This document shows positions 1 through 6,561 of a stretch of 64,000 nucleotides of DNA, piece after piece. How positions within the stretch are numbered: position 1 is the stretch's first letter; each line of letters starts with the position of its first letter. The position numbers and the translations under genes were made by a program. This DNA comes from Obrimoposthia wandeli. Taxonomy: Eukaryota. The DNA lies in NCBI GenBank assembly GCA_977020255.1, contig CDROCS010004896.1, positions 1 to 64,000 of the forward strand. Reading direction: 5' to 3'. The notes beneath the pieces are model-generated. The model was given only the letters and a program-made list of their open reading frames with translations. It did not search any database and was not told the origin of the DNA.

Positions 1-897
1 GGGGTTACGTATTGTTGCAATGGCTGGCTGGAAAAAAGTGGTTGATGCCGTACATGCTAAAGGCGGCAAAATTGCGCCTCAGTTATGGCATGTAGGTTCA
101 GTGCGTAAAGAAGGCGCCGATCCAGATCCTTCTGTGCCGGGTTATAGCCCTTCTGGTTTATTTATGCCGGGTAAGAAAAACGGTATTGCGATGTCTCAGC
201 AAGATATCGATGACGTAGTTGAAGCGTTTGCACAAGCGGCAGCCGACGCAAAAGAAGTTGGCTTTGATGCCGTTGAGATTCATGGTGCGCACGGTTATTT
301 AATCGACCAGTTCTTCTGGGAAGGTACTAATACACGCGATGATAGCTATGGTGGTGACTTGGTTGCCCGTACTAAATTTGCCGTTGAATGCCCAGTTATT
401 TTGTGTTTCGTGTGCCGCTACTAATCATTTTCCGTTTTTCACAATGGAAGCAGCAAGATTATGATGCACGTTTAGTACAAACGCCTGAAGAGTTAAAAGC
501 CTTCTTAACGCCTCTAGTCGATGCCGGTGTCGATATTTTCCATTGCAGCACACGTCGCTATTGGGAAAAAGAATTTGAGAACGCTCCTGTTGATGGTGAT
601 TTAAACCTAGCAGGCTGGACTAAAAAGTTAACGGGCAAGCCTGTGATCACAGTGGGTAGCGTTGGTTTAAATACTAGCTTTGTAGGTGCTGAACACGGTA
701 TGGAAATGTCTGCTCAAGCGGGTATTGAAACCAGTTCTATTACTCAGCTTGCTGAACGTGTTGCAAAAAATGAATTTGATTTAGTCGCTGTGGGCCGTGC
801 TTTAATTCAAGACCCTGAGTGGGTAATTAAAGTACGTGAAAATCGCTTGGAAGAATTGCAGGATTATTCGAAAGAGAGTTTGATGCAGTTGGTTTAA
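1..897 (+). pseudogene. NADH:flavin oxidoreductase (Old Yellow Enzyme family); 5' end outside window; frame broken at 389-423
   Basis: ORF 20-424 has QLWHVG and EIHGAHGYLIDQF; ORF 388-897 continues with FRFSQWK, GKPVITVGSVG and DLVAVGRAL. A 35-nt segment joins the two halves out of frame. True pseudogene vs sequencing error is unresolved. Confidence 0.8.
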
Positions 898-952: not shown

Positions 953-1062
953 ATGCCGATTAAAACCAAGACACTTAATATTTCATGCTTAGATGGATGG
1001 CAATGATAATAAATTTTCATTATGTGGCCAATCACACAAGCAGAGAACATTAAGTATTGTTC

Positions 1063-1157
1063 ACATAACTCTTAGCATTTACGACGGCTTTGTAGCGTGG
1101 TACGAACGGAAAAGAGAGCTCTTTTTGGCCGGAACGCATTTCAGCGTATTGTTAAAT
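1063..1157 (-). mobile_element. attC site (95 bp), L' box degenerate
   Basis: Minus strand ATTTAAC-AATAC-GCTGAAAT...TAAATGC-TAAGA-GTTATGT. R'' ATTTAAC is exactly complementary to this cassette's core GTTAAAT at 1823-1817. Confidence 0.8.
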
Positions 1158-1159
1158 CA

Positions 1160-1792
1160 CTACTCAATTATTTCTAATTTAAATTTTGAAATATCTGATG
1201 CATCATCATTTCCGTGAAAGTCTAGAAGTTCATCAGAGATTAATGAAGTATCTTGCATTTGTGTATACACCCCATACTCAGGTAGATAGTCCATAGAATC
1301 CGCCGTAGGAGTATCTTTATAGACATTAATATTAACCTGAGTTGTTAACGAAATAATTTTAAGATCATCATGCAAGCTTCTATCCACTATAAAAGTAAGA
1401 GTATTATCATCGACTTCATAATCTATAACCCCTTTTATATAAAGAGTATCTTCGTCTTCATACTGAAGTAATCTTGCTTCTAATTTTGAGAACTCGATAT
1501 CCCTCTCAACTTCACCTGCTTGCTTATCCTCACTTATTCTGAAGACAATATCTTTCTCCCCAATGATACTGTCACCGTTAATGTCAAAAGTTACTGACCA
1601 ATCATACTCTTTGCGTCCACTTTCAGTTTCTGAATGATCGATGGTAAGTACTTTTGGTATGTCTTTAACAAAAATTGATGCCCTTATTGTATTTTCGGAA
1701 AAAGAAGAACCTGTATCATTTTCTTTGTTACTCTCGCCATTACAAGCCATCAACAACATACAATTTATTGCCAACAAAATATTCTTATTCAT
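1160..1792 (-). CDS. cassette-encoded lipoprotein, 210 aa, unknown function
   Basis: Intact ORF; signal peptide with lipobox LMAC; stop 3 bp before attC R''. Confidence 0.8.
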   Translation of the reverse strand: MNKNILLAINCMLLMACNGESNKENDTGSSFSENTIRASIFVKDIPKVLTIDHSETESGRKEYDWSVTFDINGDSIIGEKDIVFRISEDKQAGEVERDIEFSKLEARLLQYEDEDTLYIKGVIDYEVDDNTLTFIVDRSLHDDLKIISLTTQVNINVYKDTPTADSMDYLPEYGVYTQMQDTSLISDELLDFHGNDDASDISKFKLEIIE

Positions 1793-1816
1793 ATGATTTC
1801 CTTATCTAATTTTAGG

Positions 1817-1884
1817 ATTTAACGTCCAGCAGCGGCGGCGAAGCCGTCCAGCCCGCAGGGCGATGCTGCCTTTGTTTGTTATGT
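1817..1884 (-). mobile_element. attC site (68 bp)
   Basis: ACATAAC-AAACA-AAGGCAGC...GCTGCT-GGAC-GTTAAAT; L'' AGGCAGC pairs with L' GCTGCT leaving one extrahelical G. Confidence 0.9.
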
Positions 1885-1912
1885 AGCTGTTACTAAATAT
1901 AAACTATGTTGG

Positions 1913-2344
1913 TTATTTATTTTTTGATTTAACCACTCGGGTTTTTAGTTTGTAGTTAGTAATCATCGAAATTGAGTCGGAGTCAGCATATATAATCCCA
2001 CTTGAGTAGTTTACATCCTCATCTGGATTTAAGTCCCAACTTCCTTGAGTGCATCCTACAAGCTTACCGTTTTTATCATGAAATGAAATTGAATATATTG
2101 CCTTTACTTTCTGATTTGATGTATTGTCAATTCTTGCATTTGCGTTAACAATTGTTTCACCAAAAAAGTCATCATCTTCCTGAATATTAATTACAAACCT
2201 TATCTTATCACCAACTCTTACCTTCACCTTTTTTTCATTTTCAAAAATAATAGATTTTTCCTGGTAGCTTTCCTCTAGAGCAGCGACTGAGATGCCTGGA
2301 ATCAACAGTAATGTAATAAAAAAATACGTAATACTTTTCTTCAT
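1913..2344 (-). CDS. cassette-encoded exported protein, 143 aa (possibly FxLYD-like beta-sandwich)
   Basis: Intact ORF with signal peptide. SISFHDKNGKLVG resembles the FxLYD motif (weak inference). Confidence 0.7.
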   Translation of the reverse strand: MKKSITYFFITLLLIPGISVAALEESYQEKSIIFENEKKVKVRVGDKIRFVINIQEDDDFFGETIVNANARIDNTSNQKVKAIYSISFHDKNGKLVGCTQGSWDLNPDEDVNYSSGIIYADSDSISMITNYKLKTRVVKSKNK

Positions 2345-2393
2345 AATAAGACCCTTTAATACTTAAATTTAGGATGATCGGTTGATACCAATA

Positions 2394-2469
2394 CATTAAC
2401 GCCTGCCAGCAAAGGCGAGTGAAACGAGTCCAGCCAGCTTGCTGGCAATTTTGGCTGGCTTTGTTATGT
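2394..2469 (-). mobile_element. attC site (76 bp)
   Basis: ACATAAC-AAAGC-CAGCCAAA...TTTGCTG-GCAGGC-GTTAATG; L boxes pair with one extrahelical C. Confidence 0.9.
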
Positions 2470-2843
2470 AGTTAGCTTCGAGAGTAATAACCCTTAAACC
2501 AAAGCAAGTCGCAGGAAGTGCAGTGATATAAAACAGGTTGTCCATCTACCCTTAAATTCAACTGGTTCTTCAATTAATTTCTTACAGTCTTTGCATTGAA
2601 AAATCATTATCAAGAAAAGAAACATGAGTTCGTATATGTTTTTCTATGTTTCTTTCCATCTCTTTGTTTCATTAAGAAAATAAAGAATAGAAGTAAACAA
2701 AAGCAAAATGATCGTTCCAAAGTACATTTTCATCAACTGTGAAGAGAACTACTGAAAATGATCCCATTATGATTAAAAAGTAACATCGTAACAAAACTTG
2801 TACTTGTCCCTTCTAATTGTGCATTTTTAACTTTAAGAGCCAT
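2470..2843 (-). pseudogene. frameshifted cassette ORF (starts MALKVKNAQLEG; later fragment contains CKDC)
   Basis: ATG ~13 nt after the core GTTATGT; frame stops after 36 codons while other frames carry coding-like fragments up to the attC. Confidence 0.5.
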
Positions 2844-2855
2844 TTAACCCTACTC

Positions 2856-2954
2856 ACATAACGCCTCACTAAGAGGCAAAAAATAGTTGGTTAAAATAAG
2901 CGACGCAGGAGCAAAAACCAACTGTTATTTGTCCTTTTAAGTGACTTGTTAGCA
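2856..2954 (-). mobile_element. attC site (99 bp)
   Basis: TGCTAAC-AAGTC-ACTTAAAAGG...CCTCTTAGT-GAGGC-GTTATGT with internal AGTTGGTT/AACCAACT pairing; R' GTTATGT is complementary to the next cassette's R'' ACATAAC. Confidence 0.9.
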
Positions 2955-2959
2955 TGCCC

Positions 2960-3593
2960 TTACAAATCCAACGTACTAAATTCATTATTGTTATTCATTA
3001 AATAGGTTATTGGAATACCATACTTGGTAGATATTTGACGAAAAACACTATCATATTTAAGGTCTCATTCCGCAAATTATTCGTGTTGGAACAGCGGAAA
3101 TATATTCATCTTTAGAAAACTCATTCTGGAATAGCCTATATTCATTTTCATACTTCCAGCAACTAGATTTACCATTTAAAATCCCAAGATCCTGTGGTTG
3201 TAGTCATCTAGTATCTGTTTTGTCTGTTCTATAGAAATTACGGTGGACAACCATACTGGATTTCCCTGATATCGAATTCTTCTGGAGATAAGTCATACTC
3301 AAAACACACGCCTGAATAGCCACCAGCATAATGTGCCCATAAAAGTTCATTTTTAAAACAACGGGTAAAGCTGATGGTTCTTTTTGAAGCAATTAGAAAA
3401 AAATAGTTCCTCTTTAATATCTAAAGAGTTTTTCACCCTAAAAGTTCTACTTTGATTCCGTGCTACTCCAACTGCCTTCAAGAGGGTCATTTAATGATTT
3501 ACAAGGAGGAAGGAATATACGTTGATTTACAATCATATCTAACGAGTGTAAAAAACCGTCACCCTCTAAAGATTTAAACTTATAAAGTTTCAT
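2960..3593 (-). pseudogene. DUF2971-type protein, broken by several frameshifts
   Basis: Stitched fragments: MKLYKFKSL...SLNDPLEG / ISFTRCFKNELLWAHYAGGYSGVCFEYD / KSSCWKYENEYR, matching the LYKY-NDPFE, LMWAHYA and KxxxWxYExExR motifs. Confidence 0.75.
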
Positions 3594-3624
3594 AGACTTC
3601 CCTGTGAATCCACCATGGCATGTT

Positions 3625-3716
3625 GTTTTTGTTGTGGGGCGGTGAAACGTAGCGAGGAACGAGTGAAGTTTAACCGTCCCAGCACCGTAGGTGCGAACAC
3701 CAACTCATTGTTAGCT
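3625..3716 (-). mobile_element. attC site with R' core missing
   Basis: AGCTAAC-AATGA-GTTGGTG...CACAAC (L boxes pair, extrahelical G), then AAAAAC-AACATG where GTTRRRY is expected. Confidence 0.75.
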
Positions 3717-4214
3717 TTAATGCCACTTAATATTTTTAATTGCATTGGAAATCACTTTTGAAGTTTCTTTATGTCTCAATTCACCTTCGAGTGTAACCAA
3801 AAGAGCAACCTTTAGACCGACAGCACCATACAAATTATAAAACTGTGAAGCATCTTGCTTCAGTCTCAATATGCCAAATAGGGCTTCCTGATAATGTCTT
3901 TAGCTAAAGGCAAAGTAAATCTTTAAATCTGGCTCTCTACTAGCTTGAATCATCGTTGCGGAGATATTCTCTCCAAATTCATCACGAATATGTTGCAGAT
4001 CGGCTTCGCTGCCTTTACCAGTTATTCTATAAGATGAAACTATAAGGTATTCGTTATTCGGACCAATTAATTTTGCTTGGCTAGATAATTCCTCAACCTT
4101 CCAAGTAGATGGAAGCTCAAGTAAAAAGCTATCGGTTTCTACTCTGACAGGCTCTGCAATAGCACCTTGGCTGAAATTCCAAATGGTTAAAGCTACCAGT
4201 GATATTAATTTCAT
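3717..4214 (-). pseudogene. exported cassette protein (possibly PsbP/DcrB-like), frameshifted near 3900 and 3850
   Basis: Signal peptide, FLLELPSTWKVE. Downstream frames continue (KTLSGSPIWHIETEA / YNLYGAVGLKVALLVTLEG...IKNIKWH) to a TAA abutting attC R''. Confidence 0.65.
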
Positions 4215-4225
4215 AAGCTTTCAGC

Positions 4226-4297
4226 AGTTAACGCTTTTAGCACAGGCGTTGTTTTTGCGCGTCCAGCCGAAGGCGATTGTGCCTAAACTTGTTATGT
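4226..4297 (-). mobile_element. attC site (72 bp)
   Basis: ACATAAC-AAGTT-TAGGCACA...TGTGCTA-AAAGC-GTTAACT; extrahelical G in L''. Confidence 0.92.
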
Positions 4298-4696
4298 GTG
4301 ACTTCCAAACCGAAGCTCTCCAATCTAATATATATGTACTGTACTAAACCACCTGTCAATTCAAAAAGAATCTCCAGTTTTTGGAGGAAATAATATTCCC
4401 ATGAATTCTTTCTTTGAACCATCTGCTCCTCATAATGGCTGATGGTGCTGACTCTACGATCAACCCACTAATTTTATTTGCACCAATAAATTTAATGTGA
4501 AGTTTTACGATAGCAAGCATATTCGCTTCATTAGGCTTTGTGTAATGTTCAGACTCGTACAAATACTTTGCACAGTACAAGTAGTCATACTAAAGGTATA
4601 GAATACCACTGGACGTTTATCCAGATTTTCATGAACGAAGGAATCATTTAGGTCTATACTCCTTCGGAATAATTTAATTTGAGTTAAACTATTCAT
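4294..4696 (-). pseudogene. first cassette ORF, split over three frames, unknown function
   Basis: ATG 4 nt after GTTATAT (4707-4701); track ORFs 4505-4696, 4356-4580 and 4237-4422 tile the interval in different frames. Confidence 0.55.
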
Positions 4697-4700
4697 TTAC

Positions 4701-4860
4701 ATATAACATTTTAATCATGCGCATGCGCGTTTGCACGGAAGGCTCTTTTAGAAACTTCACGGCAACTGATTGATTTAACTCGGTAATTTTCAAAGTCCAT
4801 TTCCAAGCTCCAGAAATACGCGCATGCGCGTTTGCACAAATAACGAGGGTCTCGTTATGT
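4701..4860 (-). other. array-leading recombination site: attI-like or atypical long attC
   Basis: Ends in ...ATGATTAAAAT-GTTATAT, which supplies the first cassette's core. Two exact 18-bp direct repeats GCGCATGCGCGTTTGCAC (4719-4736, 4820-4837), an 8-bp hairpin (4840-4858), and ACATAAC at 4860-4854. Confidence 0.6.
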
Positions 4861-5280
4861 CAGCGCATATATTGGTAACCCATTAATTTTGCATGACTTT
4901 TAAAATTTCTGCCAGTGCAAACGCGCAAGTTTAAGTTTATTTCCGTGCAAATGAGCACGAACATACTCTTTTCAATAAAATCATCTGTATAGATACACAT
5001 ACTTTAAAAATGCACGTTGAACCTAAATGCAAACCCCTATTAACTATAATAAGAGCGGTACATTATTAACCGCTGTATGCACTCTAAAGGCCGATTGATT
5101 TTATTGATCAGCTCTACAATAGACTTCTAGTGCACTTAACAGATGCTCTAACGATGATCTAAACATTCTTGATACACAGTCCATTAGCGGGTACTGGATA
5201 ATTATCGCTACTGGTTAGTAGCGCTGCTATTACATCATCTCCATACCCCCTCATATTTCAGCGGGGGATATTGGTATGCT

Positions 5281-6561
5281 CTATTTTCGCTTACACATAG
5301 GCGTGCCTTCACGCTCTGCTTTAATCGCTTTTTCTTCATCGATCACGTTCTGAGGGAACTGACGCATAAAACAACAACAGACATTATCGTTGATCATTGT
5401 GCGCGGTCCAAATGGATGTGCGATGTGTTTATACGGCGCATGATGATGGCCGTGTTCTTCAGCATGCGAATGTGCCTTCTCTTTAGAATCTTCATGAGTA
5501 TGGCTATGCGAATGTCCATGACTATCTGAATGAGTGTGGCTGTCTGAGTGACTATGCGACTCACCATGAGTGTGTTCATGCTCACCTTCATGAGAATGCT
5601 GATGCCCTGCTTCGCTGGTTTCGTCAGGCTGAAATTCTGCATGGTGATGATGCACATCCACTTCGCCCGCGGCCAAGCGACGCTGGAAGTCTTCCATTAA
5701 ACCCATTTCATTACCTTGTCTTGGCTGAGCAATTTCTGCGATGCGCGTAATGAAGGTATTTAATACATGAGATTGATCACGTAAATAATCGGCTTTGATA
5801 AATTCTACGTCAGGGTTTTCGGCTGCGACTTTATCCACATACGCATAGATGCGATCGATTAAGCGGCCACCAAATAAGAAGTAAGGCGCTACTACTATTT
5901 TCTTGAAGCCTAGCTTCAAGGCCATTTCTAAACCACGACCAACGCTTGGGTAAGTCACACCAGAATAAACGGTTTCTGACCAACCAAAGCCTAGGTTTTC
6001 ACTGATAATTCGGGTTAGCTTAGCGGCATCTGCGTTCGCGTCTACCACTGAAGTTCCACGGCCGACAACCACCAGCATGGTATCGTATAACTCACCCGCT
6101 GCAGGGACACCATCATTTTCATCAGAAGAATAACCTAACGATTCAGAAACTCTATGCTGAAAAGCACTAATCATTTCATCGTGTAAGCCCAGTTCTTTAC
6201 CATAGGCGATGGTCAGTTCTGGATACGTTTCTTTGTAGGTTGTTAATACCGATGGGATATCATTTTTTGCATGGGTCGCGGCAAATAACATACCTGGCAC
6301 TGCAAAGATATTTTTCACGCCTTGCTCGCGTAAACGATCAAGTGCCATGTGAATATTCGGTGAAGAATACTCTAGGAATCCGTATTCAATTTTTAGCGTA
6401 GGAAAACGCGCACGTAAACCTTTTGCTAATAAGCTGAATTCTTCTTCAGCAATTTTTGCGCGACTGCCGTGGCCACAGATAATAATACCGCTATTCTCTG
6501 GCAATACGCTTGGCAGATTATTCACGACGTCATCTAAGCTATTCATTATTTCATGGGTCAT
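5281..6561 (-). CDS. cbiX: sirohydrochlorin cobaltochelatase CbiX, long form with His-rich and Cys-containing tail
   Basis: ICGHGSR and AATHAKNDIP in the first domain, VVGRGTS in the second, His-rich C-terminal region; located in a cob operon. Confidence 0.88.
   Translation of the reverse strand: MTHEIMNSLDDVVNNLPSVLPENSGIIICGHGSRAKIAEEEFSLLAKGLRARFPTLKIEYGFLEYSSPNIHMALDRLREQGVKNIFAVPGMLFAATHAKNDIPSVLTTYKETYPELTIAYGKELGLHDEMISAFQHRVSESLGYSSDENDGVPAAGELYDTMLVVVGRGTSVVDANADAAKLTRIISENLGFGWSETVYSGVTYPSVGRGLEMALKLGFKKIVVAPYFLFGGRLIDRIYAYVDKVAAENPDVEFIKADYLRDQSHVLNTFITRIAEIAQPRQGNEMGLMEDFQRRLAAGEVDVHHHHAEFQPDETSEAGHQHSHEGEHEHTHGESHSHSDSHTHSDSHGHSHSHTHEDSKEKAHSHAEEHGHHHAPYKHIAHPFGPRTMINDNVCCCFMRQFPQNVIDEEKAIKAEREGTPMCKRK

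What the first reader, a model, noticed from the sequence alone, without database searches (positions are those of the whole stretch)
1063..4860. Hidden six-cassette integron array with no integrase
The ORF track shows only fragments here, but the minus strand carries six attC-type sites (1063-1157, 1817-1884, 2394-2469, 2856-2954, 3625-3716, 4226-4297), each directly after one ORF. Each cassette's leading core is complementary to its own R'' box: perfect for GTTAAAT/ATTTAAC and GTTATGT/ACATAAC, one mismatch or one-base offset for three others. That complementarity is the signature of integrase-mediated insertion of circular cassettes. No intI lies upstream (5000-5280 is non-coding, then cbiX) or downstream (OYE). 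The array is therefore either orphaned or served in trans.
Basis: partly seen in the sequence, partly recalled or inferred. Interest (0 to 1): 0.75.

Follow-up and report, generated by a model that had tools for sequence, protein, structure and literature searches.

The report
Integrase-less integron array that keeps attI
This stretch of an Oleispira-like marine bacterium is a real but partly decayed integron gene-cassette array that lacks its integrase gene yet keeps the integron's docking site and leader; it is a known kind of element (CALIN), and the one notable point is that such integrase-less 'heads' recur several times per genome in this genus.

Summary
The finding is real. Covariance models trained only on attC sites beside genuine integron integrases give three significant hits in the whole 139.6-kb contig. 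A fourth appears with filters off.

The other two sites are relics. Site 3625-3716 has lost its GTT core. Site 1063-1157 is a fusion of two attC halves that no longer pair. Four of the six cassettes are broken genes.

Window 4704-5015 is a discrete 312-bp unit. In related Oleispira genomes the same unit lies directly beside intI, with a LexA box. It ends exactly at a GTTA crossover core, after which copies diverge. So this is an integron platform without intI, not a bare attC cluster.

No intI or remnant exists on the contig, and an independent contig bridges the junction. Relatives carry 4-6 such heads but only one intI. The cbiX-OYE gap is empty in three relatives.

Whether an integrase still serves the array in trans cannot be told, because this bacterium's genome is incomplete in the assembly. 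The scan had already reached the same reading on another piece of this genome (s1-204578). Verdict: a CALIN that keeps attI, a new member of a known kind.

The parts
17..897 (+). Flanking OYE-family NADH:flavin oxidoreductase gene. It runs off the contig start and is frame-broken around 387-420.
   Evidence: Pfam PF00724 on both ORF pieces. It is 82% identical to the OYE of relatives, with a net 7-nt deficit at 387-420.
1063..1157 (-). attC relic of cassette 6, a hybrid of two attC halves. R'' is ATTTAAC and R' is GTTATGT, but the arms do not pair.
   Evidence: No CM score. The 5' half is 97% identical to an attC in the intI-linked array L002. Other samples' contigs diverge at 1120. The fold shows no R/L stem.
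1160..1792 (-). Cassette 6 gene, intact, 210 aa. A predicted lipoprotein of unknown family.
   Evidence: ORF list. No Pfam match. Atlas gives only weak 'lipoprotein/hypothetical' leads.
1817..1884 (-). attC of cassette 5, 68 nt, with a weak L stem.
   Evidence: R3 18.9 bits, E 0.025, and R2 15.3 bits, at exact coordinates on the + strand.
1913..2344 (-). Cassette 5 gene, intact, 143 aa. It has a signal-peptide-like N-terminus; function unknown.
   Evidence: ORF list. No significant Pfam match.
2394..2469 (-). attC of cassette 4, 76 nt.
   Evidence: R2 27.3 bits and R3 29.5 bits. It is 97% identical to an attC in the intI-linked array of Oleispira G003 (L039 1798-1870).
2470..2855 (-). Cassette 4, a pseudogene of a small membrane/zinc-ribbon-like protein.
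   Evidence: 88.6% identical to an intact 121-codon ORF in L039, with several frame-shifting indels.
2856..2954 (-). attC of cassette 3, 99 nt, the long type with extrahelical bases on the bottom-strand 3' arm.
   Evidence: R1 90 bits, R2 71.7 bits, R3 66.5 bits; the + strand scores far above the - strand. Fold z -3.0. It is 94% identical to the intI-linked attC at L035 3803-3895.
2955..3624 (-). Cassette 3, a gene broken into at least three ORF fragments.
   Evidence: ORF fragments. A homologous contig in an ice metagenome differs by five indels.
3625..3716 (-). attC relic of cassette 2. R'' is AGCTAAC and the L pairing is kept, but the R' GTT core is lost, so cassettes 2 and 3 are fused.
   Evidence: Sequence reading. 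The homologue in L012 has GTTAAAT. No CM score. The intact cassette-3 start seen in run X4 reads GTTATGCATGCC.
3717..4225 (-). Cassette 2, split into a 104-aa and a 50-aa ORF.
   Evidence: ORF list. No Pfam match.
4226..4297 (-). attC of cassette 1, 72 nt.
   Evidence: R2 31.1 bits and R3 30.8 bits.
4298..4700 (-). Cassette 1, three overlapping ORF fragments (a broken gene).
   Evidence: ORF list. No Pfam match.
4701..4707 (-). attI-type crossover core GTTATAT. Homology among head copies ends here.
   Evidence: BLAST ends at 4702-4704 in about 20 head copies. The core sits at a fixed distance from the hairpin and is followed by unrelated sequence in every copy.
4704..5015 (-). The 'head', the integron platform without intI. 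It holds, in order:
- a LexA-box relic (4985-5000);
- boxes with a GTTTGCAC core (4945-4958, 4915-4927) and an inverse box (4882-4894);
- an invariant hairpin (4838-4860);
- a palindrome that occurs twice (4819-4837, 4724-4741).
   Evidence: It aligns to the intI-adjacent region of G003:C49 and other genomes. IntI lies directly beside the head in L039, L054, L063 and L069.
4711..4800 (-). Leader ORF of 29 codons. GGAG lies 7 nt before the ATG, and the stop lies 3 nt before the core.
   Evidence: The same 29-aa peptide, with substitutions but no frame breaks, occurs in 8 short-variant heads, including the intI-linked L054.
5016..5280 (.). Non-coding spacer between the head and the cbiX stop codon, where intI would be expected. 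It holds no intI remnant.
   Evidence: tblastn and blastn find nothing. The X1 contig covering 4967-5209 is identical.
5281..6561 (-). Flanking cbiX (long form, with a His-rich tail).
   Evidence: Pfam PF01903. It is 85-88% identical to CbiX of Oleispira MAGs.

Best explanation
Window 1063-5015 is a chromosomal integron without its integrase. The platform (head) survives: the intI-side regulatory DNA with a LexA-box relic, repeated boxes, a leader ORF and an attI-type GTTA core. Six cassettes follow it on the minus strand.

Shown:
- the cassettes are bounded by attC sites of the types found in intI-linked arrays;
- the head is the same unit that lies beside intI in related Oleispira genomes;
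- no intI or remnant lies on the contig.

Inferred:
- the cassettes were inserted one by one at the GTTA core by an Oleispira-type IntI (attI x attC), which explains why each cassette's leading TTRRRY matches its own R'';
- transcription once came from a promoter in the head, with the leader ORF coupling ribosomes to the first cassette, as ORF-11 does in attI1;
- the module now sits without intI between cbiX and OYE and is decaying.

The signs of decay are one attC that has lost its core, one that is a fusion left by a deletion, four broken cassette genes, and a LexA box mutated at a key base. An integrase elsewhere in the genome could still act on the four sound attC sites and on the attI core.
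For: - CM hits trained on independent intI-linked attCs: three on the whole contig at E<0.01 plus one with filters off, all in the array and on the predicted strand.
- The training structure is supported by covariation. All 43 training hits lie on the strand predicted by intI orientation.
- attCs of cassettes 3, 4 and 6 are 94-97% identical to attCs in intI-linked arrays.
- Head homology runs to the intI-adjacent region with sharp ends at 5015 and 4704. IntI lies beside the head in four genomes. IntI-linked heads carry perfect LexA boxes; the window's has ATGT for CTGT.
- The last roughly 40 nt plus the core are conserved in more distant genera, once beside an intI-like start.
- No intI on the contig.
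- The junction is bridged by an independent contig.
- The gap is empty in G002, G049 and G054. The same head plus a different cassette set lies at the same place in G003.
- Decay.
Against: - No recombination has been shown, so the attI identity of the head rests on position and homology only.
- The simple consensus scan finds no promoter in the head.
- The GTTA core lies about 150 nt from the invariant hairpin and the boxes, which is longer than any characterised attI.
- Head copies without intI have upstream break points clustered within about 30 bp. Random deletions do not obviously explain this.
- The window's head is closer (83%) to heads at other loci in other genomes than to the head at the same locus in G003 (75%). 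This hints that the module moves or is replaced by a route not identified here.
Confidence: 0.85

Rival explanations
1. The array is not a fossil but one of several working 'satellite' platforms. Oleispira keeps 4-6 attI heads, each with its own cassette array, and one LexA-controlled intI serves them all in trans. The window's organism has that intI on DNA not present in this assembly.
For: - There are 4-6 heads but one full intI per genome in G046, G049, G051 and G003.
- intI-less heads are followed by attCs that score with the CM.
- The window and G003 share head and locus but no cassette, so the content turned over after they split.
- Cassette 4 sits in the intI-linked array in G003 at core-like divergence of 88.6%.
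- The head is well kept, and its leader ORF is intact.
- The locus that carries intI in G003 (dcd-mrp-rnf) is absent from the assembly, so intI could simply be unassembled.
Against: - In this window 2 of 6 attCs are dead and 4 of 6 cassettes are pseudogenes.
- The G003 head at the same locus has lost its upstream half.
- No Oleispira-type IntI above 45% identity is found in the assembly.
- No direct evidence of excision or insertion exists.
Confidence: 0.3
2. The cluster arose by insertion of loose cassettes into a secondary genomic site (attG) by an integrase acting in trans, and was never part of an integron platform.
For: CALINs can arise this way (Cury 2016, PMC4889954; Loot et al. preprint). 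The gap is empty in several relatives.
Against: The array begins with a 312-bp unit homologous to the intI-adjacent platform, including a LexA-box relic, and the first cassette starts at that unit's GTTA core. An attG insertion would leave host sequence there.
Confidence: 0.04
3. A complete integron whose intI was dropped by misassembly at about 5000-5280.
For: The assembly is a mixed, multi-organism one, and the contig starts 1 kb from the array.
Against: The X1 contig covering 4967-5209 matches with no mismatch, and X1 covers every bin from 4934 to 6500. The syntenic G003 locus and many other heads also lack intI.
Confidence: 0.02
4. The sites are ordinary intergenic palindromes (REP-like or terminators), not attC.
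For: Unconstrained folding energies of five of the six sites are not unusual. Several register as terminator-like.
Against: The CM hits are specific to this 3.2-kb span in 139.6 kb, strand-specific, and have exact ends. The sites are near-identical to attCs beside real intI genes.
Confidence: 0.01

Closest known systems
[quoted passage not shown] 2016, PMC4889954)
   Same: [quoted passage not shown]
   Different: It keeps the whole intI-proximal platform (attI-type core, leader ORF, LexA-box relic). attI is not searched for in most CALIN surveys because it is unknown for most integrons. No intI pseudogene is left.
Complete chromosomal integron of Oleispira (e.g. G003:C49, G049:C147, G046 at 3.15 Mb)
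   Same: It has the same head (72-83% identical), the same core, the same attC types, and one shared cassette.
   Different: The intI gene is absent. The LexA box is mutated. Two attC sites and four cassettes are decayed.
Class 1 integron attI1 with ORF-11 (review PMC8876359)
   Same: A short ORF with GGAG 7-8 nt before the ATG ends at the crossover point, so translation could be coupled to the first cassette. A LexA box lies at the intI promoter.
   Different: There is no sequence similarity. The ORF here has 29 codons and its own stop. The head is much longer than the 65-bp attI1. The function is untested.
Fused cassettes in class 1 arrays (PMC4670013)
   Same: Loss of part of an attC locks two neighbouring cassettes together, as at 3625-3631 and at 1063-1157.
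   Different: Here the fusions accompany general pseudogenisation rather than creating a new expressed unit.

Membership tests
attC recombination site | Inverse core R'' (RYYYAAC) at the 5' end and core R' (GTTRRRY) at the 3' end of the top strand. | tested here: met
   Both cores are present at five of six sites. Site 3625-3716 has R'' but AACATGC in place of R'.
attC recombination site | An imperfect hairpin on the bottom strand: R and L stems, an unpaired spacer, and extrahelical bases on the 3' ('') arm. | tested here: met
   Met for 2856-2954, 4226-4297, 2394-2469 and 1817-1884 in the CM alignments. 3625-3716 keeps L pairing. 1063-1157 does not pair.
attC recombination site | Scores with a covariance model of attC sites. 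| tested here: met
   Four of six sites score with models trained on 24 and 43 intI-linked sites. Two do not. IntegronFinder's own model was not available.
Integron cassette array | One promoterless ORF per cassette, all co-oriented, each followed by its attC. The cassette's leading TTRRRY is complementary to its own R''. | tested here: met
   Six units lie on the minus strand. Complementarity is perfect in two, one mismatch in two, a one-base offset in one, and absent in one.
Complete integron | An integron integrase (tyrosine recombinase reaching the TIGR02249 cut-off) adjacent to and divergent from the array. | tested here: not met
   No match on the contig at any strength. tblastn is negative.
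Complete integron | An attI site at the head of the array. | tested here: inconclusive
   By homology and position the head equals the intI-adjacent region of four genomes and ends at a GTTA core. Recombination was not tested.
Complete integron | A Pc promoter reading into the cassettes. | tested here: inconclusive
   There is no sigma-70 consensus match on the minus strand within 4704-5015. The scan is crude.
CALIN | [quoted passage not shown] | tested here: met
   Four sound attC sites. The nearest possible intI position is off the contig: the contig start is 1 kb away on the OYE side, and 134 kb on the other side has none.
Sedentary chromosomal super-integron | Tens to hundreds of cassettes with near-identical attC sites. 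| tested here: not met
   There are six cassettes. The attC sites are 68-99 nt long, of different types, and do not align to each other.

The most novel reading that the evidence does not exclude
Oleispira and its kin may run a 'distributed integron'. One SOS-controlled intI would serve several dispersed attI platforms, each with its own leader ORF and cassette array. These platforms would be created by a recurrent, clean process that copies or strips the platform at a fixed point beside the LexA box. The window would be one such platform, here caught in decay.
Probability: 0.25. Interest if true: 0.6.

Novelty: new member of a known kind. Interest (0 to 1): 0.35.

Why it matters
CALINs are about as common as complete integrons, yet how they arise is unsettled. 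Most have no intI pseudogene nearby, and attI cannot be searched for in most lineages.

Here attI can be recognised by homology. That shows this CALIN is an integron platform stripped of intI, not a secondary-site insertion or a split array. The same genus carries several such stripped platforms per genome, with break points within about 30 bp of one another.

This gives a concrete, testable system. A cultivable relative with a finished genome appears to exist (G046). It could be used to ask whether one integrase serves several attI sites, and how integrase genes are lost so cleanly. The cargo itself (small secreted or lipoproteins and broken genes) is unremarkable.

Tried and rejected
- Rfam holds no attC family and gave no hit.
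- Three home-made detectors were too unspecific and were dropped. These were core plus stem counting and constrained folding energy. They gave 340 and 346 candidates, and true sites were not separated from the rest.
- Unconstrained folding z-scores are significant only for 2856-2954 and, weakly, for 3625-3716.
- Model R1, built from one attC type, found only the same type.
- I looked for the window organism's own intI. The four full IntI genes in the assembly are only 41-45% identical to Oleispira IntI and sit in other bacteria's arrays. The G003 intI neighbourhood (dcd-mrp-rnf) has no orthologue in the assembly. Absence of intI therefore cannot be concluded.
- I considered that the invariant hairpin at 4838-4860 is the true crossover site. 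I rejected this because homology among copies continues 130 nt past it to the GTTA core.
- Joints between attC halves seen in metagenome contigs were not read as recombination products. They rest on short sides (18-30 nt) and were laid at 90% likeness.
Full report
**Context.** The window is the first 64 kb of contig C4896 (139,637 bp) of a 1.35-Gb, 6912-contig assembly that mixes a large host genome with many bacteria. CbiX of the window is 85-88% identical to CbiX of Oleispira MAGs, and flanking DNA is 88-90% identical to that of the nearest ones. The organism is therefore an Oleispira-like gammaproteobacterium. The finding lies between two convergent core genes, cbiX (5281-6561, minus) and an OYE-family oxidoreductase (17-897, plus). 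G+C falls from 44-47% in these genes to 32-39% across 1000-5200.

**Are the six sites attC sites?** Read on the minus strand, each site begins with an inverse core ending in AAC just after an ORF. Five of the six end in GTT plus four bases.

Rfam has no attC family, and my ad hoc detectors were unspecific. I therefore built covariance models from attC sites that lie beside genuine integron integrases.
- Four TIGR02249-positive intI genes of other bacteria in the same assembly, and the one in Oleispira G003, supplied the arrays.
- A canonical R-box/L-box structure placed on 24 such sites is paired in 74% of cells against at most 46% for slid controls, with covariation 0.27 against at most 0.10.
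- Model R2, built on this, found 43 sites in the intI-linked arrays, all on the strand predicted by intI orientation. These 43 sites gave model R3.

Over the whole contig, both strands, R2 and R3 each give exactly three hits at E<0.01: 2856-2954, 4226-4297 and 2394-2469. With filters off on 12 kb, 1817-1884 follows at 18.9 bits, E 0.025. For 2856-2954 the + strand scores 66-90 bits against 7-23 for the other strand.

**The two sites that fail.**
- Site 3625-3716 keeps its inverse core and L pairing, but AACATGC stands where the GTT core should be. Its 90%-identical homologue in G003 ends in GTTAAAT. In an ice metagenome the intact version of the next cassette starts GTTATGCATGCC. A small deletion has therefore removed the core and fused cassettes 2 and 3.
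- Site 1063-1157 is a chimera. Its first 38 nt match an attC in the intI-linked array of contig C5466 at 97%. Contigs from four samples that carry cassette 6 diverge from the window exactly at 1120 and continue with the rest of that attC. The window's 3' part resembles another attC type seen in G003, and the two arms do not pair. This is what a deletion between two neighbouring attC sites would leave.

**Cassettes.** Cassettes 6 (210 aa, lipoprotein-like) and 5 (143 aa) are intact. Neither they nor any fragment has a family assignment. Cassette 4 is 88.6% identical to an intact ORF in G003's intI-linked array but carries several frame-shifting indels, not confined to homopolymers. Cassettes 1-3 are strings of overlapping ORF fragments.

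- perfect for cassettes 6 and 4;
- one mismatch for cassettes 1 and 2;
- a one-base offset for cassette 5;
- no core for cassette 3.

**The head.** Next to the intI of Oleispira G003 (contig C49, 390 bits, with the SAM-like and catalytic domains) lies a region that aligns with window 4704-5015. Reading away from intI, the region contains:
- a LexA box;
- two direct boxes with a GTTTGCAC core and one inverse box;
- an invariant hairpin (ATAACGAG, three bases, CTCGTTAT);
- a palindrome;
- a short ORF with GGAG 7 nt before its ATG;
- the palindrome again;
- a GTTA core 3 nt after the ORF's stop.

In about 20 copies from related genomes, similarity to the window starts at 5014-5019 at the furthest and stops at 4702-4704, inside the core. 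After that every copy differs. IntI lies directly beside the head in L039, L054, L063 and L069. Those heads have perfect CTGT-N8-ACAG boxes, whereas the window reads ATGT-N8-ACAG. The last roughly 40 nt plus the core are also found, at 88-97% identity, in more distant genera of the family, once about 280 bp from an intI-like start.

The 29-codon ORF is kept without frame breaks in eight short-variant heads, and a 39-43-codon version in the long variant. Position, sharp ends and a LexA box at the integrase promoter (a known, widespread feature; PMC8876359) identify the head as the integron's PintI/attI region. The leader ORF resembles ORF-11 of attI1 in layout only. This last point is inference.

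**No integrase.** The family search over the whole assembly lists 114 matches, none on C4896. tblastn with seven IntI proteins finds nothing better than E 0.4 on the contig and nothing in 4860-5300. DNA similarity to the G003 platform ends about 30-40 bp before the place where intI would start. A Logan contig from run X1 covers 4967-5209 without a mismatch, and X1 covers every bin from 4934 to 6500. The junction is therefore not an assembly artefact.

**Comparison across relatives.** The cbiX-OYE gap varies as follows:
- 60-95 bp in G002, G049 and G054;
- 1.1 kb in G046 and 2.3 kb in G001, holding unrelated genes;
- 9.9 kb in G003, holding a shorter head plus a different set of attC-bounded cassettes and some non-cassette genes.

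Run X1 also holds a variant contig that joins OYE to cbiX with only a few hundred other bases between.

Heads are multi-copy. Five distinct places occur in the single-contig genome G046, and 4-6 in G003, G049, G050, G051, G052, G054 and G055. Only one full-length intI of this type occurs per genome, and it always lies beside one head. intI-less heads are followed within 1.5 kb by sites that score with R2. A second, more divergent head with cassettes lies on contig C1089 of this assembly. The upstream break points of intI-less heads differ but cluster. Some keep about 60 bp of the intI 5' region, some end just outside the LexA box (as in the window), and some end inside it.

**Orphaned or served in trans?** The four full IntI genes of the assembly are 41-45% identical to Oleispira IntI and belong to other bacteria. 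The dcd-mrp-rnf neighbourhood that carries intI in G003 has no orthologue in the assembly (best match 74% at the nucleotide level and 53-56% at the protein level). The Oleispira-like genome is therefore incomplete here and the question stays open.
- For past activity in trans: the window and G003 share head and locus but no cassette, and cassette 4 sits in a different array in G003 at core-like divergence.
- For present decay: two dead attC sites, four broken cassettes and a mutated LexA box.

**Known or new?** This is a CALIN as defined by Cury et al. [quoted passage not shown] They also note that attI is unknown for most integrons (PMC4889954). Secondary-site insertion (attG) does not fit, because the platform is present. 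I found no paper on Oleispira integrons. I formed my reading before seeing that note.

**Unexplained.**
- The role of the invariant hairpin.
- How head-plus-array modules reach new intergenic sites.
- Why the break points cluster.
- Why the window's head is closer to heads at other loci in other genomes (83%) than to the syntenic one in G003 (75%).

Noticed in passing
window 380-425: The flanking OYE oxidoreductase gene is frame-broken. A scrambled stretch of about 30 nt with a net 7-nt deficit relative to three relatives splits it into two ORFs (20-424 and 388-897). It may be a real pseudogene.
   Followed up: partly
L048 (G000:C1089:200265-203305), head at 1330-1660: A second intI-less head with the same architecture (LexA-like box, boxes, hairpin, leader ORF, GTTA core). 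It is followed by at least two cassettes whose attC sites score 77 and 22 bits. A GYD-domain gene lies upstream and there is no intI. This may be the piece reported as s1-204578.
   Followed up: partly
window 4838-4860 and all head copies: A 19-nt hairpin (ATAACGAG, 3 nt, CTCGTTAT) is the most invariant part of the head in about 20 copies. It looks like a minimal attC (AAC/GTT arms) but is not where homology ends. Its function is unknown.
   Followed up: partly
window 897/5288 joint in runs X1 and X2: Contigs from the likely source sample and from a biofilm metagenome join the OYE end to the cbiX end without the 4.4-kb array. Co-occurring or related strains therefore lack it or carry something much shorter.
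   Followed up: no
L012 15190-17340 and 18700-20700: In G003 the array at the same locus is interrupted by non-cassette genes. These are a large transporter-binding-protein fusion and a block of opposite-strand membrane genes, with attC sites on both sides.
   Followed up: no
window 5400-5660: CbiX carries a long His/Ser/Asp-rich tail of about 70 residues before a Cys-rich end, as in long-form CbiX metal-storage tails.
   Followed up: no
L037 (G000:C666:4918-14917): The intI-linked array of another bacterium in the assembly holds about ten near-identical cassettes of roughly 560 bp with 77-nt attC sites, a tandemly amplified cassette family.
   Followed up: no
G046:C1:585983-586580: The finished Oleispira-like genome has, besides its one intact intI, a second intI broken by a stop codon and lacking the middle of the protein, with no head detected beside it.
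   Followed up: no
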